NCBI RefSeq assembly: GCF_001194135.2
Contig: NC_068985.1
Location: 11,250,404-11,293,700, forward strand
DNA length: 43,297 nt
Direction of reading: 5' to 3'
DNA from: Octopus bimaculoides
Lineage: Eukaryota
Shown: piece by piece, positions 1 to 42,416 of the stretch
Layout: every line of letters starts with the position of its first letter
Numbering within the stretch: position 1 is the first letter of the stretch
The notes under the pieces: generated by a model
What the model was told of the DNA's origin: nothing
Databases searched by the model: none
The model's input: the letters and a program-made list of their open reading frames with translations, nothing else
Made by a program: the position numbers and the translations under genes

Positions 1-335
1 CATCCTTCGTGTTTGGCGTTGAAGTGTTGGTCGAGGGCCAACCTCGCCGCCACTACGTTGGACGCGATGCCAGTACTAAGTGCCTCTTCTAATTTCTTAA
101 CTAGGTATCCCTCTATTCTATTTCGGTCTAACGCTAGGGCCTTACTGTACCTAACCGATTCTGACTTGATTGCTTTTTTGAGGGCATACCACCATCTGTT
201 GTTGATGATGGCACCCGTTAATGCTCTCTTAACCAAAGTGCTAATCCGGTCCCTGTAAGCCTGGCGTGCCGTGAACGACGCGTTCAGCTTCCAGTAACCG
301 GGACCCTGTCTATGTGTCTTATCTAAGTCAAGCGT
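1..335 (-). mobile_element. Tx1/L1-clade LINE ORF2 fragment (linker just after the AP-endonuclease domain); continues beyond the window start
   Basis: My minus-strand translation is open for about 110 codons: TLDLDKTHRQGPGYWKLNASFTARQAYRDRISTLVKRALTGAIINNRWWYALKKAIK... GxGxWKLNxS is the conserved post-endonuclease motif of Tx1/L1 ORF2. The + ORF 13..258 is its antisense shadow. Confidence 0.85.
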
Positions 336-6399: not shown

Positions 6400-7525
<1,126 letters not shown>

Positions 7526-10700: not shown

Positions 10701-10789
10701 CGAATCCTCATTCTCTTCCTCGGTTCTCTCCATCATGTTCAGCAGTATTTTTTCTTACTTACCCATCAAGGGGTGAATTCTAAAGAGAC

Positions 10790-15275: not shown

Positions 15276-15573
15276 GTCTGTGCGTACATATAGACAGGTA
15301 TGTGTGTATAAGTATAGTTACCATATGAATTAAGATCCCCGTTGACAGGCCGCTGGCATTAAATATAGCGCTAAATACAGAAAGCATACAGATTAGTAGC
15401 TCCAATTATCTAAAGCTACAGGATTTGTTGTATATATAAACAGAATCGCTACTTGACACTCTGCCATTGACCAAGTGATTGTCCACACCTCTGATAAGAA
15501 CACAATTCCAGGAAAGTTGTTCACATTTTTGTCGCGTCTACGACGAAATAGTTACATAAATTCTGCGTCGCGT

Positions 15574-17226
15574 TCATGAGGTTACATTCACTCGCGTCAT
15601 TCGTGCTACATTCTTCCATCGATTCTTAAACATTTCTGCAGTCAGGCATTTCCTGCCTAGCTCTATTTTCCTTTTAAGGTGAAAGGTGAAATAATTCACC
15701 AGTGCAGATCTAGAGATGAAAATGCCTGACCTTAATCCTTTCATCCTCGTTCTCCAAATTACCTGTCTCGCAATTGCTACCACAGCGAGAAAATAAATCT
15801 TACCTTCTTTCGAGAGGAAATCCGGCGGGTCAATTTTTACTTTTGATTCAGACGATAGCTGTACTCTTCCTGTAACTGACAACAGTTGTTCAGCACACAC
15901 CCACACATCCGACACCTCCGAACATTGTACAATAGCGTGCGGAACGGTTTCCCTGTCCTGCCCACATCTTGGACAAGTCGGAGTGTCGGGGCCACCATGC
16001 CTTGCGAGTTTGTCCCGAAGAGGTAAGGCCCCTCGGTAACATTGCCATACCAGAGACTTCTGAAAGTTATCCAGGGTCATCGGCCCGAATGTACGTCGGA
16101 ACAGACTGGTCAGCTGATTATCGTCGAGACCAAGGGTTTCCCCTAAGGTGTCATCACATTTCGCCTCTGCAAGCCCTCTATAGAAGAATGCGGTGGAACC
16201 CCCACCGCAGGCATTGCCCGAGCGACGGAATGGCAGGAGTGCCTTGCGACGCTCCGTATACCATGCACCNNNNNNNNNNNNNNNNNNNNNNNNNNNNNNN
16301 NNNNNNNNNNNNNNNNNNNNNNNNNNNNNNNNNNNNNNNNNNNNNNNNNNNNNNNNNNNNNNNNNNNNNNNNNNNNNNNNNNNNNNNNNNNNNNNNNNNN
16401 NNNNNNNNNNNNNNNNNNNNNNNNNNNNNNNNNNNNNNNNNNNNNNNNNNNNNNNNNNNNNNNNNNNNNNNNNNNNNNNNNNNNNNNNNNNNNNNNNNNN
16501 NNNNNNNNNNNNNNNNNNNNNNNNNNNNNNNNNNNNNNNNNNNNNNNNNNNNNNNNNNNNNNNNNNNNNNNNNNNNNNNNNNNNNNNNNNNNNNNNNNNN
16601 NNNNNNNNNNNNNNNNNNNNNNNNNNNNNNNNNNNNNNNNNNNNNNNNNNNNNNNNNNNNNNNNNNNNNNNGAATACATTGGCTACCTCCGCCCTCCTTT
16701 TCAGGGATAGCCACCGCCAAAACCAGGTCTTGACTATGTGGGTTACCCTGCTCGATACCTCGGCCCAGTTATTCTCTATTTGGAGGTCTGGTCCAAACCA
16801 AACTCCTAGCAACTTAATCGGACCCTCCGTCCAACGTCCCACGACGCTGTCAGGAGGCATCGACTTGCCTCTCCAGGTGCCGAGCTGCAAGCCGACTGAC
16901 TTTTCACGATTAACTTTTGCTCCTGCTACCGTCTCGTAAACCTCAATGGCCTTGCCTACCCTCTCTAGGTGATCCAATTCGGTTACGATGACGGTGATGT
17001 CATCCGCGTAAGCTGAAACCAATTTTCCACAACCTGGCTCTCTCGGAATGCCGCTCAATTTTCGCAGTAATGACTCAAGGGTCATCACATACAAAATCGG
17101 GGAGAGCGGATACCCTTGACGAACCGAGAGTTTGATGTTGAATGGCTTCGATAAGAAGCCGTTCACCCGAACTACCGAGTCGATGAAAAGTATTGCAAAT
17201 CCACAACTCTCGCATCCTATGTACAC
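15574..17226 (-). mobile_element. Tx1-clade LINE ORF2: RT domains 3-7 plus C-terminal zinc-binding (zf-RVT) region; gap 16270-16671 inside
   Basis: SVRQGYPLSPILY, VSAYADDITV, IKLLGVWF, then LDNFQKSLVWQCYRGALPLRDKL..CPRC..DRETVPHAIVQC. The frame is open on each side of the gap. Confidence 0.95.
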
Positions 17227-18370: not shown

Positions 18371-18461
18371 AGATAACTATGAAGAGACAGAGTGAGAAGT
18401 GGATGATCGTACACAATGTGTTAAAATATGTATATGATGGGCTAATNNNNNNNNNNAATAA

Positions 18462-18839: not shown

Positions 18840-18891
18840 GGCGGTGAGCAGACAGAAATGTTAGCACGCCGGTCGAACTGCTTCGCGGTAT
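18840..18891 (+). mobile_element. 5' part (A-box side) of a family-A tRNA-derived SINE interrupted by Tx1 insertions
   Basis: ggcggtgagcagacagaaatgttagcacgccggtcgaactgcttcgcggtat aligns with the intact heads at 23278 and 23649 and stops at the cggtat motif. Confidence 0.85.
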
Positions 18892-20523
18892 AACGTCTCC
18901 GTGAATTATTGTGAATACTGTTGTGTTACTTTGTGAAAATTGTCTCGGTGAATAATTGTGAATTTGGTGGAATTATTACGGTTGCATTTCACGTGAGCTG
19001 CTGCATTTTTCCCAGTTATGGCAAGTGGTAGTGTCTCCAGTATGGAGAGCTACGCCAAGGCCACTGCGGGTGAGGAAGCCAGTGCCTCTGGAAACCAAAT
19101 TAATCAAGTTGGATATGGAGGAGGTAACCAGAAGCAGGAATTTGATAGAAGTTGAGGGAGACTCGTACAAATTGTGTCCCCCAAAAGAGACTAAAGAAAT
19201 TAAAATTCTGAGGACAGTAGTGTATCGTACACAGGCTGTCGAAATCGGTAAAATTGAAATGGTGACGGAAGAGGAAATCGAGGAGTGCCTGGGTGAAACT
19301 GTCAATGAAGCCACGTACATCAACAGAGGAAGAAAGTTCGGTACGGTTGAGGTGAGGTTCGCCACTATAGAAGAGGCAACCAAGCATGCAACCAACATAT
19401 TAAGAAGTGAGAAAATAGCATTGCTACCAAGCCATAGAGGAAGAAGAAGTGTGAAAATGCGAATTCCTAGAGTTACACCAGATATTAAACCAGAGTGGTT
19501 GGTTGCAACAGTGCTGGCTGCAACCAAGGAGGAGCCGGAATTGGGACCAGTGGCGAAAACAGTGTGCAAATGGTGGGTATTTAGACTCGAAATGTGGCAT
19601 TTTGCCACATTCGAAGACATAGAAAGAATTCCCTACCAGATAGAAGTTGAAGACGAGAAAACGTTAAATGTCATAGTCGAGGGAAGAAAACCAAATTGTT
19701 ATATATGCGGGGAGAGAGGTCATATGAAGACCAAATGCCCTCTATATGAATTCACACAACCACAGCAAGAGAAAGCACAAACAGAGGAGGAAAGAATTGT
19801 TGACCACACTGAGGAAATAAAAGAGAGACAGAAGTGTGAAACGGAGAAAAGAAAGGAGAAGAACGAAAATGTGGCTACCCTAAAAAGCGAGGGAAAAATA
19901 AGTCAAAGGAACGGTCAACAGAAAACATAAAAGAGATAAAAGAAAGTCAGAAACTAATAATGTACAAGAAGAGGAGGAGAGAACGGATAAAGATGTAAAA
20001 TACAAGGGGCTTTTGATAAAGTACGAGAATTGCGAGCAGATGGAGAGAAAAGACGAGAGGTTAGAAGAAATAATAAGAGTGAAAATGCCAGAGAAATGTG
20101 CTGAAAAATGCATTTTGATACGTGAGGAAAGATGCTTCGAGTGCATAAAAGAACTTGGTGAAAATATAAAAACGAAACGGATATGGTTGTTGGAGACACC
20201 ACCCTCTAGAACTAATTATTTGCAGTTGTTAAGGACGGACGTAACAATGATTAATGGAAGAAAGGTAACGCGAGTGTTTTGATTTTTTTTGAGTAACAAA
20301 ACCGTTAAAATGTTAACATGACGTAGAACGTAAAAGTGAAAAACTGGATAAATGTAACCACCCGACTTCGGGGATCGAGTGGACATTGCGCCTCATTTTT
20401 TTCATTCTTGCATATTATCATTTTATTTTAATTACCCCGATTTTATGTTTGCGTTTTGTACTGTCTTTGTTTTGTGATGTCTTAAAAATTCTTTGTATAG
20501 CCCTTTATGGGTAAGAAAGAAAT
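18892..20523 (+). mobile_element. Element E1: ORF1-only Tx1-clade retroelement (5'UTR + gag-like ORF1 + 3'UTR/tail)
   Basis: gtgaa-rich 5'UTR, ORF1 with zinc knuckle, T-rich 3'UTR ending gccctttatgggtaagaaagaaat. Bounded by target-like motifs at 18886 and 20524. No endonuclease or RT motifs seen. Confidence 0.8.
19025..20282 (+). pseudogene. Tx1/L1-type ORF1 nucleic-acid-binding protein (RRM-like region + CX2CX4HX4C knuckle), probably with two frameshifts
   Basis: Open frame 19025..19930 has RGRKFGTVEVRFATIEEA and CYICGERGHMKTKC. An out-of-frame ATG at 19042 gives MESYAKA (SYA motif typical of the ORF1 N-terminus). An overlapping frame from ~19922 runs on to the stop at 20282. Confidence 0.8.
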
Positions 20524-20529
20524 CGGTAT

Positions 20530-21874
20530 AACGGCTCTCTGAAGTTAATACGTGGTGATTTTTTAATTGGTGTTTGTGCTGCTTTGCAGCGGTTTGGGTG
20601 TTTACGTGTGTAATTTGTTTGATCTTTCTCTCCTCTTACGAGAAGAGACAACTGGTTGAAGAATGTCTGAAGACAGTTATTGTTACTCAGACATGTCATC
20701 GTCCGAGGAGGAGTTGCTGGAGGCATTTAAGACAATGGACAAGAAACTGATAAAAGAGAAGCGGAATTTTGCTGATGTAGCAAGGTGTAAGGAAACAGAA
20801 GTGGATATCAGGAATTTGGAAGACAGAAAGAAGAAATGAACCGAGATGGGTTTGAAGTGAAGCTGTTGCCTTCCAAGCGGTTAAAAACGGAATTAGGGGC
20901 AAGACGATAATATATCGAACCTTTTCGATAAATAAATGAAAAATAGACCTTCTCACGATAGAACTGTAAGGCCCTACTGCTATTCCGGCGCTCGGGTAAC
21001 TCCAGCGGTGGGAGTTCCCCACGAATTTTATATAGTGGGTTGGTAGAGTCTGAATGTGACGATGGCTTCGTGGCGACATTAGGTCTCGGGTATGTTAAAC
21101 TGGACAGCCTGTTCCATCGTGCATTCGGGTTGAGAATGCTGGATATCTTCCAAAATTCCTTGACCTGACAATGTTACAGAGGTGCCTTGCTCGTTTGGGA
21201 TAAGCCCACAAGACATGGTAAGCGTCAGTTTCCGACCTGTCCAAGATGCGGGGGAGACAGGGAAACCGCCCCTCACGCTATTGTCCAGTTTCCGGTGATA
21301 TCTGAAATGTGGGTTTATGCTGAACATATGTTGTCCGGCGAAGGAAGAGTACGGCTGTCGACTGAATCAATTATAAAAATTGAACCACCGGGAGTTTTAA
21401 CAAACGAAGGTAAGAATTGTTTTCTCACGGTTGTAGCAATAGCGAAAGAGGCAGTATGGAAGACTAGGAAAAAAGGAATTAAGACAGGCAACTTTATCTC
21501 TGGCCACAATTTACGATCATTTTTTACTTTTCATTTGAAAAGGAAGGTGTGGCTGGAGAAGAGGTGTCTGTCGGAGAGAATGTTCAAAAAGAGATGGAAG
21601 CGTGTTGCCCGAGTGTTGTGCGTGCAAGGAACCGTATGATTAGGCTATAAAAGAATAATAAAAAAGGTACCAGCGATAGACCGTGGCTTGTGGGTTCGGA
21701 GCGTGGCCTTATCATCGCTACATTTGTGTTGTTTGTAGTGTTAATTCCATTCAATTTTTTTTATATTTCATATAATTTTTATATTCATATTTTATGTAAA
21801 ATCATAACGTATTACTGATCCTAATCAGTTGTTTTGTACATTTGTGTTTGGCCCCCTGTGGGCAATGAAGAAAT
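20530..21874 (+). mobile_element. Element E2: internally deleted Tx1-clade LINE (5'UTR + ORF1 N-terminus joined to ORF2 C-terminus + 3'UTR)
   Basis: ATG at 20663 gives MSEDSY...KRNFADVAR (58 aa). TIIYRTF..KIDLLTIE is homologous to E1 TVVYRTQ..KIEMVTEE. From ~20968, KALLLFRRSGN...QCYRGAL...CPRC..DRETAPHAIVQ runs to the stop at 21639 and is co-linear with 15574-16250. Tail gccccctgtgggcaatgaagaaat. Confidence 0.9.
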
Positions 21875-22045
21875 TGGTATTTCGTCTGTGTTTACGTTCA
21901 GAGTTCAAATTCCGCCGAGGTCGACTTTGCCTTTCATTCTTTCGAGGTCGATAAATTAAGTACCACTTGCGTAATAGGGCCGATCTAATCCACTGGCCCC
22001 TTCCCTCAAAATTTCGGGCCTTTTGCCTAGAGTAGAAAAAAATAA
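21875..22045 (+). mobile_element. 3' remainder (B-box, core, tail) of the split family-A SINE
   Basis: tggtatttcgtct...gagttcaaattccgccgaggtcgactttgcctttcattctttcgaggtcgataaattaagtacc...aaatttcgggccttttgcctagagtagaaa. Joined to 18840-18891 it gives a complete copy co-linear with 23649-23865. Confidence 0.9.
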
Positions 22046-22371
22046 TAACATACACAGGAACAAAAGTGACGTGCCATAATTTTGCTTGAATATCAATTTG
22101 TAATGCAAAGATTCATGTTTATCCCATACTATTCACATTCCTAATATTGCCTCTGGTATAAAATATCAAACCATCCGTTTACACAAAGCCTTTCAGAGTA
22201 ATCAACATATCGTAATAGATGCTTAGAAACACAAGCCTTCCCTATTTCTATAATCAAAAGGATGTAGTAGCAGTCCAAGTATAAGCTACTATATAAAACC
22301 AGCGTTCAGTGGCTGCACAATTGTTCTCGGTGTGGTCATTGCTATAAGTTACTTCTCAACTTTAAGTGTGG

Positions 22372-22747
22372 AGGCGCAATGGCCCAGTGGTAAGGGCAGC
22401 GTGATCGCGGTTTCGATTTCCAGACCAGGCGTTGTGAGTGTTTATTGAGCGAAAACACCTAAAGCTCAACGATACTCCGGCATGGTATGGTGGCGAACCC
22501 TGCTGAACTCTTTCACCACAACTTTCTCTCACTCTTGCCTCCTGTTTCTGTTGTGCCTGTAATTCAAAGGGCCATCCTTGTCACGCTGTGTCACGCTGTG
22601 TCACGCTGAATATCCCCGAGAACTACGTTAAGGGTACACGTGTCTGTGGAGTGCTCAGCCACTCGCACGTTAATTTCACGAGCAGGCTGTTCTGGTGATT
22701 GGATCAATCGGAGCCCTCGTCGTCGTAAGCGACGGAGTGCCAACAAC
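22372..22747 (+). mobile_element. Full-length tRNA-derived SINE (family C)
   Basis: Head aggcgcaatggcccagtggtaagg (A-box) and ggtttcgatttcc (B-box), GC-richer body, tail cgtcgtaagcgacggagtgccaacaac; internal (gtcacgctgt)x3. Confidence 0.8.
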
Positions 22748-22994
22748 TCTGAAGTAGATTGCTTCACTAAAATGATAATATCGTCAATTATGTTTAGTGT
22801 TTCATGTTCTGTATCCTGTTATATGATACGGATCCTAAAACAGTAAACACTTATCTGGATAAGGTCCTCTTATTGATTGGATTTACTGATGAAATAATCC
22901 GTGAAGAGTGCTTAATTCATTTATTTCTGAATTCGTCCGGCTAGCATTTATATAATGACTTCCGCTTTCGTTAGTTGATTTATACCTTGATGAG

Positions 22995-23170
22995 GAAATC
23001 ATTCACGTTGTGCAGATCACCTTTTCGGTATTTTGCTACGGTTCTCTACATTTGGAGTTCAAATACTATGAAGTCCTGTTTGCATTTTCACTAAATTCCT
23101 AAAAAAATATTTTCCAATCGAGTGCTGGGCTTGGGGTCAATTTATTTGACTAATTACTCCTAAACATTTT
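22995..23170 (+). mobile_element. Old, degenerate family-A-related SINE
   Basis: aatcattcacg...cggtattttgct...ggagttcaaat...gtttgcattttca...ggggtcaatttatttgactaa. Confidence 0.5.
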
Positions 23171-23277
23171 GCCTTTGTACAAATGTAAGAAATCAATATT
23201 TTTTTTTCTATTGACATTTCAATAAAAACGCTGTCTCCTTTTCGTTAAAGGTACTTTTGTAATATTAATATTGAATA

Positions 23278-23503
23278 GGGCGGCGTGCTGGCAGAATCAT
23301 TAGCACGCCGGGCGAAATGCTTAGCGGTATTTCGTCTGCCATTGTGTTCAGAGTTCAAATTACGCCGAGGTCGACTTTGCCTTTCATCCTTTCGGGGTCG
23401 ATTAGATAAGTACCAGTTACGCACTGGGTTCGATGTAATCGACTTAACCCCTTTTCCTTCATTGTCCCCTTTATGTTTAACCCTCTGTGAGTAATAAAGA
23501 AAT
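23278..23503 (+). mobile_element. Family-A SINE with Tx1-type 3' tail, flanked by a 16-bp target-site duplication
   Basis: A-box tggcagaatc, B-box gagttcaaatt, core gcctttcatcctttcggggtcg, tail gtttaaccctctgtgagtaataaagaaat. TSD atattaatattgaata (23262-23277) / atattaatattcaata (23506-23521). Confidence 0.9.
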
Positions 23504-23648
23504 TGATATTAATATTCAATAGAAGTGGTGGGGCGTCGCCATAATATATAGACGTCTCCTTTAGGAGATTATTGAAATAAGCGAATTGCTAATATGATGA
23601 ACTACCAAACAGGACTTTGATCAGTACTATTATGTCTACCGTTCTAAA

Positions 23649-23865
23649 GGCGGCGAATTGGCAGAAACGTTAGAACGCCGGGCGAAATGTTTAGCGATAT
23701 TTCGTTTGCTGCTACTTTCCGAGTTCAAATTTTGCCGAGGTCGACTTTTCCTTTCATCCTTTCGAGGTCGTTTAAATAAGTACCAGACACGTACTGAGGT
23801 CGATGTAATCGACTTACCCACTCTCCGAAAATTTCAGGCCTTGTGCCTCTAATAGAAATGATTAT
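23649..23865 (+). mobile_element. Family-A SINE with the alternative tail (aaatttcaggccttgtgcc...gattat)
   Basis: Same head and core as 23278, different 3' end. Confidence 0.9.
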
Positions 23866-30261: not shown

Positions 30262-30413
30262 CAAGTCGATTACAATGATCCCAGAGTTCAAATTGTTATT
30301 TTACTGACCCCAAACGGATGAAAGGCAAAGTTGACCCCAGTGGGATTTGAACTTAGAATATAAAGACAGACGAACTTTGTCTAAGCACTTTGTCCGACGC
30401 GTCAGCTCGCCGT
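30262..30413 (-). mobile_element. Family-A SINE (partial)
   Basis: Reverse complement: ggcgagctgac...aagttcaaatcccactggggtcaactttgcctttcatccgtttggggtc. Confidence 0.8.
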
Positions 30414-30427
30414 TTTAGTTTATTTTG

Positions 30428-30634
30428 TAATAATCGTTTCAAGTTTTGGCAAAAGAGCAGCGATTTCGGGGGAGTTTTACGTCGATGCTACTGACCAACA
30501 GGTACTTGTTTTATCGAACCCGAGAGGATGAAAGGCGAAGCCGACCTCGGCGTAATATGAACTCACAATGTAAAGACTGGCGATATAATGCAAAGCACTT
30601 TGCCCAGCGTGTTAACAATTCTTCCAGCTCACCG
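30428..30634 (-). mobile_element. Family-A SINE, head-to-tail with 30262-30413
   Basis: Reverse complement: cggtgagctggaagaattgttaacacgctgggc...gagttcatattacgccgaggtcggcttcgcctttcatcctctcggg. Confidence 0.85.
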
Positions 30635-42202: not shown

Positions 42203-42416
42203 AATCTTTTTTCACATTTTCCCACAAGGCCAGCATCGTTAGGAAAAGGGGATAGTTGATTACATCAATCACATTTTTTGAATATTATTTCATTTTATCA
42301 TTCTCGAAAGGATGAAAACCAAAGTTGACCATGGGATCATTAGAATTCAGAACATTGAGAGCTGGAAGAAATAGCTCTGAGCCTCTTCCGATGTATTGAC
42401 GATTCTGCCATTCGCC
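42203..42416 (-). mobile_element. Degenerate family-A SINE
   Basis: cacaaggcc tail; ttttatcattctcgaaaggatgaaaaccaaagttgacc core; gacgattctgccattcgcc head. Confidence 0.7.

What the first reader, a model, noticed from the sequence alone, without database searches (positions are those of the whole stretch)
20490..23503. The target SINE family carries the same 3' hairpin tail as the Tx1 elements: passenger and landing pad at once
Seen: E1 ends tgtatagccctttatgggtaagaaagaaat, E2 ends tgtttggccccctgtgggcaatgaagaaat, and the SINE at 23278 ends tgtttaaccctctgtgagtaataaagaaat. E1 and E2 have a (g/a)ccc-5 nt-ggg(c/t) stem-loop just before AAGAAAT, weakened in the SINE, and none has poly(A). Established: shared 3' stem-loop tails mark stringent LINE-SINE partners (e.g. 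eel UnaL2/UnaSINE1), while L1-type elements usually rely on poly(A). Inference: this Tx1 mobilises a SINE whose head contains its own target, a feedback loop in which each SINE insertion creates a new LINE site.
Basis: partly seen in the sequence, partly recalled or inferred. Interest (0 to 1): 0.75.

Follow-up and report, generated by a model that had tools for sequence, protein, structure and literature searches.

The report
Octopod LINE–SINE shared hairpin tail
Two defective L1/Tx1-like retrotransposons and a neighbouring SINE end in the same small hairpin followed by AAGAAAT; this is a real, conserved 3' tail shared by LINEs and SINEs across octopods, which is an ordinary LINE-SINE partnership in an unusual LINE clade, and the proposed self-targeting feedback loop is not demonstrated.

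Summary
E1 (ends 20523), E2 (ends 21874) and the SINE at 23279-23503 end in TGTTT, a 4-bp stem, a 5-nt loop, the second stem arm, then AAUAAAGAAAU. None has poly(A), and the flanking target-site duplications begin directly after the tail.

A model built from LINE tails alone finds the SINE tail at E=8e-7. The same tail ends L1-superfamily LINE copies in Octopus sinensis, Argonauta hians and an unnamed octopod-like transcriptome. It also ends at least 17 sites in 21 kb of Argonauta DNA, and the ones inspected are SINE copies.

The stem covaries. Across 15 tails, 93% of cells pair against 69% in shuffles, and three of the four pairs change on both sides.

The window's other SINE copies carry a shorter variant of the same hairpin in which one pair is flipped. 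The whole SINE family therefore uses this tail.

This is best read as a stringent-type LINE/SINE partnership that also mobilises internally deleted LINEs (E1, E2).

The "landing pad" loop rests on one locus. E1 and E2 lie in tandem at one 13-bp site of one SINE head. No other LINE or SINE copy I could fetch is inserted in a SINE head.

Tx1-versus-L1 placement could not be tested.

The parts
18840..18898 (+). SINE head (copy D). It is cut off after gcggtataacgtct. Its last 13 nt (18886-18898) are target-duplication copy 1.
   Evidence: 80% identical to the head of SINE 23279 (family D17).
18899..20523 (+). E1, an internally deleted LINE. It has a 5' end, an intact ORF1 (19025-19930, 301 aa with a CCHC knuckle) and a 3' UTR with the hairpin tail. 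It has no ORF2.
   Evidence: Pfam zf-CCHC. ORF1 is 28% identical to the ORF1 of the near-complete Argonauta LINE and of the L010 LINE. Flanked by cggtataacgKct, 12 of 13 bases.
20494..20523 (+). E1 3' tail module. Stem 20500-20503 / 20509-20512, loop 20504-20508, then AAGAAAGAAAT.
   Evidence: (MFE contains the hairpin; z=-2.76).
20524..20536 (+). Target-duplication copy 2 (cggtataacggct), lying between E1 and E2.
20537..21874 (+). E2, a defective LINE. The ORF2 C-terminal remnant is at about 20968-21639 and is followed by a 235-nt 3' UTR. The 5' part (20537-~20960) is of uncertain origin, although its first bases resemble the 5' end of E1.
   Evidence: 57% aa identity to E3 over 222 aa. Translations. 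The 5' start ctctgaagttaat compared with ccgtgaattatt of E1.
21845..21874 (+). E2 3' tail module. Stem 21851-21854 / 21860-21863, then AATGAAGAAAT.
21875..22039 (+). SINE body (copy C), resuming at tggtatttcgtct. This is target copy 3 and the same position at which head D stops. It ends in the short hairpin tail variant at 22010-22039.
   Evidence: 83% identical to SINE 23279 over 119 nt. Alignments.
23260..23278 (+). 5' target-site duplication of SINE A (taatattaatattgaatag).
   Evidence: Matches 23504-23522 at 17 of 19 bases.
23279..23503 (+). SINE A. It has a tRNA-like head, the conserved body (..gtcgactttgcctttcatcctttcggggtcga..aagtaccag..), a linker and the LINE-type hairpin tail.
   Evidence: Homology to Argonauta SINE1 is continuous from the body to the last base.
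23474..23503 (+). SINE A 3' tail module. Stem 23480-23483 / 23489-23492 with one C.A mismatch, then AATAAAGAAAT.
   Evidence: LINE-only HMM E=7.9e-7. 42/53 and 43/53 identity to the O. sinensis and Argonauta LINE tails. The closest LINE tail is L020.
23504..23522 (+). 3' target-site duplication of SINE A (tgatattaatattcaatag).
23649..23859 (+). SINE B, from the same family. Its short tail variant aatttcAGGCcttgtGCCTctaatagaaat lies at 23830-23859.
   Evidence: 83% identical to SINE A over 174 nt. The hairpin falls in register in the MAFFT alignment.
15574..17226 (-). E3, a 5'-truncated ORF2 of a sister LINE subfamily (RT plus zf-RVT) interrupted by an assembly gap. No recognisable copy of the tail module lies downstream.
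   Evidence: Pfam RVT_1 and zf-RVT. 3' UTR read.

Best explanation
The three ends are copies of one conserved 3' module. It runs U-rich lead-in (UGUUU), 4-bp G/C-rich stem, 5-nt loop (consensus CUUGU), then AAUAAAGAAAU, with no poly(A). This module terminates an octopod lineage of APE-type, L1-superfamily (L1/Tx1-like) LINEs.

Inferred mechanism, by analogy with tested stringent LINEs. The ORF2 protein of autonomous members binds this hairpin tail on an RNA and starts target-primed reverse transcription at its end. Any RNA that carries the module is therefore copied in trans.

Three kinds of passenger carry it here:
- an ORF1-only deleted LINE (E1);
- a LINE keeping only its ends (E2);
- a tRNA-like SINE family that octopuses share with Argonauta. 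Its tail variants all descend from the same module.

E1 and E2 were inserted one after the other at the same 13-bp site (YGGTATWWCGTCT) inside the head of a SINE copy. This shows a local sequence preference of the endonuclease.

Shown:
- homology of the tails;
- stem covariation;
- retrotransposition of the SINE as one unit, with target-site duplications;
- the LINE domain architecture;
- two insertions at one SINE site.

Inferred:
- recognition of the hairpin by the RT;
- which LINE subfamily drives which passenger.
For: Tails and target-site duplications were read directly.

A LINE-only tail profile finds SINE A at E=7.9e-7 and 17 further tails in the 20.8-kb Argonauta locus at E<0.01.

The same tail lies about 230 nt after the ORF2 stop in:
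- O. sinensis L008;
- Argonauta L009;
- Logan contigs L001, L013, L015, L018 and L020.

Stem covariation:
- Fifteen tails: 93.3% of cells paired against 69.0% in shuffles (0/500), and 25-45% when the partner is slid. Pair types are GC6/CG4/UG3/AU2, CG9/GC3/UG1 and CG14/UA1.
- Ten LINE tails alone: 92.5% against 76.2% (1/500).

MAFFT, run without any structure, puts all the SINE hairpins in the same register. It also shows that SINE A is homologous to Argonauta SINE1 from the body to the last base.

Architecture: the Argonauta copy has ORF1 (related to E1's ORF1), then APE, then RT, then the tail. Pfam finds RVT_1, zf-RVT, zf-CCHC and Exo_endo_phos. A relative matches human L1 ORF2p at E=3e-50, against 1e-24 for R2.

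Literature: stringent pairs, and the rarity of L1-clade examples, are described in PMC3472496 and PMC3747384. Tx1 elements mobilising SINEs with a shared target are described in PMC4494074.
Against: - No autonomous copy of the lineage is in the window, so no partner is shown to be active in this genome.
- Only one window SINE has the long tail, and that copy has a stem mismatch and an internal TTTT (23452-23455).
- Single-sequence folding energies are not better than shuffles, except for E1.
- I built the 30-nt register by hand for the LINE tails. MAFFT later confirmed it for the SINEs.
- Several rows are related by descent, so the shuffle counts overstate independence.
- The AAUAAA in the tail could serve polyadenylation rather than RT binding.
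Confidence: 0.75

Rival explanations
1. Self-reinforcing loop. The LINE that mobilises the SINE is specific for a site in the SINE's own head, so every new SINE copy adds a LINE landing pad.
For: - E1 and E2 are two different elements. Both sit at exactly the same position of the SINE head, each followed by a copy of YGGTATWWCGKCT.
- The target-site duplication of SINE A begins TGATAT, which matches TGGTAT at 5 of 6 bases.
- Target-specific Tx1 elements that share a transposon target with their SINEs are known (PMC4494074).
Against: - It rests on one locus, probably one SINE copy, and the second insertion may simply have reused the duplicated site.
- The other SINE copies in the window that keep a head carry no insertion.
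- The seven related LINE 3' junctions from other loci (L008, L009 twice, L001, L013, L018, L020) are not in SINEs.
- No SINE-into-SINE-head junction occurs in the window or in the O. sinensis locus.
- Argonauta SINE target-site duplications are unrelated sequences.
- The SINE's tail is closer to other LINE subfamilies than to E1 or E2.
- An insertion at this site separates the presumed A and B boxes and so inactivates that SINE copy.
Confidence: 0.2
2. One-off chimera. SINE A is a single template-switch product (LINE tail RNA, then SINE RNA) or a SINE with a severely 5'-truncated LINE inserted at its end. On this reading it is not a member of a SINE subfamily that uses the tail.
For: - Only one copy with the long tail is present in 43 kb.
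- Template-switch chimeras flanked by a single target-site duplication are known for L1.
Against: - One 19-bp target-site duplication flanks the head through to the tail.
- The same body-linker-hairpin-tail layout is aligned continuously in four Argonauta SINE1 copies.
- The other window SINE copies carry a variant of the same hairpin.
- The tail is also found on a second, unrelated small tRNA-SINE in Argonauta.
Confidence: 0.08
3. The conserved module is a 3'-end processing or stability signal (hairpin plus the AAUAAA poly(A) signal) rather than an RT recognition element, and SINEs merely inherited it.
For: AAUAAA is present in most LINE tails (L008, L009, L001, L018, L020) and in SINE A.
Against: - E1 and E2 lack AAUAAA (AAGAAAG, AAUGAAG), as do the abundant Argonauta SINEs (AAUAGAG) and the SINE B/C variants. 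All of them keep the hairpin, with compensatory changes.
- No copy carries a poly(A) tract.
- Presumably Pol III-transcribed SINEs have no use for a Pol II poly(A) signal.
Confidence: 0.1

Closest known systems
UnaL2 / UnaSINE1 of eel (L2 clade), the tested stringent-type LINE/SINE pair
   Same: The LINE and SINE share a short 3' tail containing a conserved stem-loop. There is no poly(A). The SINE is a tRNA-derived passenger.
   Different: - The LINE clade differs (L2 there, L1 superfamily here).
- UnaL2 ends in (TGTAA)n repeats, whereas this tail ends in a fixed AAGAAAU.
- The eel pair has been proven by retrotransposition assay. Nothing has been tested experimentally here.
L1-clade stringent pairs: maize LINE1-1_ZM with ZmSINE2/3, and Chlamydomonas L1-1_CR with SINEX-3_CR (Ohshima 2012, PMC3472496)
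   Same: An L1-superfamily LINE has a conserved 3' stem-loop supported by compensatory changes, and SINEs share it.
   Different: Those are plant and algal lineages. That survey found only three SINEs with L1-clade tails, and none in animals. The present case is in cephalopods and has no poly(A).
Tx1-Mar LINEs and SINEU of crocodilians (Kojima 2015, PMC4494074)
   Same: L1/Tx1-type LINEs are thought to mobilise SINEs. The insertions go into another transposable element at preferred positions.
   Different: - There the evidence is a shared target (a Mariner DNA transposon) and shared 5' heads, not a shared 3' hairpin.
- The target there is not the SINE itself.
- Here target preference is shown at a single locus only.
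Target-specific Tx1-group elements (Tx1L in Tx1D, Keno in U2, Kibi and Koshi in microsatellites)
   Same: Tandem head-to-tail insertions occur at one short site, as E1 and E2 do here. The Argonauta LINE and SINE array lies within (ATT)n.
   Different: Those families have most copies at the target. Here all seven related LINE 3' junctions from other loci are elsewhere. Clade membership is untested.
HAL1 and other internally deleted non-autonomous LINEs
   Same: E1 keeps ORF1 and both ends but lacks ORF2. E2 keeps only the ends plus an ORF2 remnant.
   Different: HAL1 depends on poly(A)-type L1 machinery. These elements carry the specific hairpin tail.

Membership tests
Stringent-type LINE/SINE pair (shared 3' tail) | The SINE 3' end is homologous to the 3' end of a LINE | tested here: met
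   The LINE-only profile finds SINE A at E=7.9e-7. Identity to LINE tails is 42/53 and 43/53. Argonauta SINE against Argonauta LINE is 43/50.
Stringent-type LINE/SINE pair (shared 3' tail) | A conserved stem-loop in the tail, supported by compensatory changes | tested here: met
   93.3% of cells paired against 69% in shuffles. Three of four pairs change on both sides.
Stringent-type LINE/SINE pair (shared 3' tail) | No poly(A); the tail abuts the target-site duplication | tested here: met
   In the Argonauta copies the target-site duplications start within a few bases of the tail.
Stringent-type LINE/SINE pair (shared 3' tail) | An autonomous partner LINE in the same genome, active at the same time | not testable with these tools
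   The window holds only defective copies (E1, E2, E3). The source genome could not be searched.
Stringent-type LINE/SINE pair (shared 3' tail) | Retrotransposition depends on the tail | not testable with these tools
   This needs a cell-based assay.
Tx1 clade of non-LTR retrotransposons | APE-type ORF2 (endonuclease, RT, C-terminal zinc domain) plus ORF1 | tested here: met
   RVT_1 and zf-RVT in E3, and zf-CCHC in E1's ORF1. APE, RT and tail in the Argonauta relative. Human L1 ORF2p is the best solved-structure match, E=3e-50. This shows the L1 superfamily only.
Tx1 clade of non-LTR retrotransposons | RT phylogeny places it with Tx1 rather than L1 proper | not testable with these tools
   No named Tx1 or L1 reference set was available. 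Octopus repeat surveys list L1-Tx1 but no plain L1 among recent LINEs (PMC13282606). That is suggestive only.
Tx1 clade of non-LTR retrotransposons | Target-sequence-specific insertion in a large share of copies | tested here: inconclusive
   Two elements lie at one site of one SINE head. Seven related LINE 3' junctions from other loci lie in unrelated DNA.
tRNA-derived SINE | A head derived from a tRNA, with A and B boxes | tested here: inconclusive
   Box-like motifs (TGGCAGAAT, GAGTTCAAATT) were seen by eye only. ARAGORN and Rfam report nothing.
tRNA-derived SINE | Short, non-coding, dispersed copies with target-site duplications | tested here: met
   Seven copies or fragments in 43 kb, plus copies in O. 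sinensis, Argonauta and L018. Target-site duplication of SINE A.
Self-targeting LINE-SINE loop (proposed) | LINE and SINE copies recurrently inserted at the same SINE-head position in independent SINE copies | tested here: not met
   Only the E1/E2 locus shows it. The junction search found no other case in the window or in any fetched locus, including O. sinensis and Argonauta. The sample is small.

The most novel reading that the evidence does not exclude
In this octopus, one sub-lineage of the hairpin-tailed L1/Tx1-like LINEs has an endonuclease tuned to YGGTATTTCG, a sequence inside the head of the SINE it mobilises. SINE amplification would then keep creating harmless landing sites for the LINE and its deleted derivatives. 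LINE insertion would in turn inactivate those SINE copies. The result would be a coupled passenger-and-target system.
Probability: 0.15. Interest if true: 0.7.

Novelty: new member of a known kind. Interest (0 to 1): 0.42.

Why it matters
SINEs make up roughly a tenth of octopus genomes (PMC13282606), yet none of the papers I could search names their LINE partner. A covarying hairpin tail shared with an L1-superfamily LINE would name that partner.

It would also add an animal example of stringent 3'-end recognition in a clade best known for poly(A)-dependent, relaxed recognition. This bears on whether stringent recognition is ancestral in the L1 group (PMC3472496).

It gives a concrete 30-nt element to mutate in a retrotransposition assay.

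If the self-targeting loop proved general, it would be an unusual form of LINE-SINE co-dependence. At present it is only a lead.

Tried and rejected
- A protein search with a SINE-encoded peptide found nothing.
- The first ORF2 C-terminus search gave one hit only.
- Exact-pattern scans for the SINE core and for the tail found nothing in viral, metagenome or bacterial-genome collections.
- An exact look-up of eight window ORF variants found none, so the source genome is not indexed for them.
- The LINE family of ENA sample ERZ21867824 (L010-L012) is too distant. It has a different 3' UTR and no hairpin tail.
- L016 and L017 end before the tail.
- An outer A-U helix around the hairpin, suggested by the MFE folds, is not supported: only 61% of cells pair.
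- I considered CTAT as a shared target in Argonauta and rejected it. Target-site duplications show that CTA(T) belongs to the SINE end.
- A weak tail-like hit at window 10751-10776(-) has no LINE or SINE context and is taken as chance.
- A PDB search with the short E3 RT fragment could not separate L1 from R2. A longer relative could.
- E1 and E2 show no clear overall 5' UTR homology with each other or with the Argonauta LINE. Only the first ~12 bases resemble each other.
- No LINE carrying exactly the short SINE B/C tail variant was found.

Full report
**What is in the window.** The window is AT-rich eukaryotic DNA with assembly gaps and microsatellites.

Between 18840 and 22040 lies a SINE that has been split in two. 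Its head (18840-18898) stops after gcggtataacgtct. Its body resumes at 21875 with tggtatttcgtct. Two LINE-derived elements lie head to tail between the halves.

- **E1 (18899-20523)** has an intact 301-aa ORF1 with a CCHC knuckle. That ORF1 is 28% identical to the ORF1 of a near-complete Argonauta LINE. E1 has no ORF2 and ends in a 3' UTR.
- **E2 (20537-21874)** carries the last ~220 codons of ORF2, 57% identical to E3, and a 235-nt 3' UTR.

The 13-nt site occurs three times: cggtataacgtct, then E1, then cggtataacggct, then E2, then tggtatttcgtct. The simplest reading is two successive insertions at the same site, the second into the duplicated target. The first dozen bases of E1 and E2 resemble each other (ccgtgaattatt and ctctgaagttaat). 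This fits two elements that are complete at the 5' end but internally deleted.

A third, 5'-truncated copy of a sister subfamily (E3, 15574-17226, minus strand) has RVT_1 and zf-RVT. It has no recognisable tail.

None has poly(A).

The SINE at 23279-23503 is flanked by a 19-nt target-site duplication matching at 17 of 19 bases. So the head, body and LINE-like tail were inserted as one unit.

A profile built only from LINE tails finds this SINE tail at E=7.9e-7 in 158 kb. Nothing else in the window scores better than E=0.16.

**The tail is a lineage-wide LINE 3' module.** A profile search with the ORF2 remnants led to several loci that carry it:

- a LINE copy in Octopus sinensis (L008);
- a near-complete LINE in Argonauta hians (L009). 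Its order is ORF1, then APE, then RT, then the tail;
- several contigs from one set of sequencing runs (L001, L013, L015, L018, L020). L018 also carries the head of the same SINE.

In each of these copies, about 200-350 nt after the ORF2 stop where one is readable, the sequence ends ...TGTTT, stem, 5-nt loop, stem, AAUAAAGAAAU or a close variant.

A more distant LINE family (L010-L012) lacks the module.

A 912-aa relative matches human L1 ORF2p at E=3e-50, against 1e-24 for R2. Together with APE, zf-RVT and a CCHC ORF1, this places the lineage in the L1 superfamily. I could not test whether it falls in Tx1 proper. Octopus repeat surveys do list L1-Tx1 as the L1-type LINE present (PMC13282606, PMC8967140).

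**The hairpin covaries.**

| Alignment | Cells paired | Shuffled | Shuffles reaching it | Partner slid |
|---|---|---|---|---|
| 15 tails, gap-free 30 nt | 93.3% | 69.0% | 0/500 | 25-45% |
| 10 LINE tails only | 92.5% | 76.2% | 1/500 | 27.5-47.5% |

The four pairs, from outermost to innermost, in the 15-tail alignment:

| Pair | Types seen |
|---|---|
| 1 (outermost) | GU, AU, GC |
| 2 | GC 6, CG 4, UG 3, AU 2 |
| 3 | CG 9, GC 3, UG 1 |
| 4 (innermost) | CG 14, UA 1 |

Caveats:
- I set the register for the LINE tails by hand.
- Some rows share ancestry.
- Single-sequence folding energies are unremarkable except for E1.
- An outer A-U helix is not supported.

**SINEs share the module.**

In 20.8 kb of Argonauta DNA, the LINE-only profile finds 17 tails at E<0.01. 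The copies inspected sit on two kinds of element:
- SINE1 copies, which have the same conserved body as the window's SINE;
- a separate 157-bp tRNA-like SINE. Three copies of it lie in tandem directly in front of the full-length LINE.

MAFFT aligns SINE A with Argonauta SINE1 continuously through the body, linker, hairpin and tail.

The window's other copies (21875-22039 and 23649-23859) and the O. sinensis copy have a shorter end, aaatttcRGGCcttgtGCCT..agtagaaa. MAFFT places it in the same register. There the second-innermost pair is flipped from C-G to G-C.

The "weakened" stem of SINE A (C.A) is shared with one LINE tail (L013). Its closest LINE match is L020, which shares TGTTTAAC..GGGTAATAAAGAAT.

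**How it most likely works.** By analogy with tested stringent LINEs (UnaL2; zebrafish L2, PMC4176376), the ORF2 protein would recognise the hairpin tail and prime reverse transcription at its end. This would mobilise SINE RNAs and deleted LINEs in trans. That step is inference.

**The landing-pad loop.**

In favour:
- Two different elements lie at the identical SINE-head position.
- The target of SINE A begins TGATAT, against TGGTAT for E1 and E2.

Against:
- It is a single locus.
- The other SINE copies in the window that keep a head carry no insertion.
- None of the seven related LINE 3' junctions from other loci is in a SINE.
- No SINE-in-SINE-head junction occurs in the window or in any fetched locus.
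- Argonauta SINE target-site duplications are unrelated to one another.
- The SINE's tail is closer to other LINE subfamilies than to E1 or E2.

I give the loop about 0.15-0.2.

**Comparison with known systems.** Shared-tail LINE/SINE pairs are textbook. L1-clade examples are few: three SINEs among 58 pairs in the 2012 survey, all from plants or algae (PMC3472496). Tx1 elements that mobilise SINEs and share a transposon target are known in crocodilians (PMC4494074). In the papers I could search, I found no statement of the LINE partner of octopod SINEs. Repbase could not be consulted.

**Verdict.**
- The partnership is supported.
- The Tx1 label is untested.
- The feedback loop is unproven.
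- This is a new member of a known kind, of moderate interest.

**Limits.** The source genome itself could not be searched.

Noticed in passing
window 18899-20523: E1 is an ORF1-only, internally deleted LINE. Its 301-aa ORF is intact and has a CCHC knuckle, and the element is flanked by a 12/13 target-site duplication. It looks like a young non-autonomous 'half-LINE', comparable to HAL1.
   Followed up: partly
L009 4815-11188 (Argonauta hians BAAFZT010000007.1): The order is: a LINE tail remnant, (ATT)17, three tandem 157-bp tRNA-like SINE units with the hairpin tail, a near-complete LINE, then (ATT)4. The SINE units abut each other and the LINE 5' end with only ctattt between them. This could be repeated insertion at one site or tandem amplification.
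   Followed up: partly
window 22368-22747: A different repeat of about 380 bp with a tRNA-like start (gtggaggcgcaatggcccagtggtaagggc..ggtttcgatttccagacc) lies between the SINE copies. It has an internal (gtcacgct)3 and no hairpin tail.
   Followed up: no
window 69-299 (-): A fragment of an APE endonuclease domain from another LINE, 39% identical to the APE of L010 over 77 aa.
   Followed up: no
window 15396-15419 (-), E3 3' UTR: E3 lacks the TGTTT-hairpin-AAGAAAT module. It has a different 6-bp hairpin (GTAGCT..12 nt..AGCTAC) about 160-180 nt after its stop codon. The true 3' end of E3 was not found.
   Followed up: no
window 23452-23455: SINE A contains a TTTT run upstream of its tail. If the SINE is transcribed by Pol III, this would probably terminate transcription early, so this copy is probably not a source copy.
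   Followed up: no
window 30263-30634 (-) and 42241-42354 (-): Three older, more diverged copies of the same SINE family (68-80% identity across queries). Their ends (..gctggccttgtgggaaaatgtgaaa.. and similar) look like a third, decayed variant of the same tail.
   Followed up: partly
P0009: A protein that NCBI lists as a zinc-binding domain protein of a Herbaspirillum MAG is 51% identical to the ORF2 C-terminus of this octopod-type LINE. It is most likely host contamination in the bin.
   Followed up: no
window 6485-7524 and elsewhere: Long (TA)n tracts interrupted by runs of N. There are several assembly gaps, including one inside E3 and one at 18448-18457.
   Followed up: no
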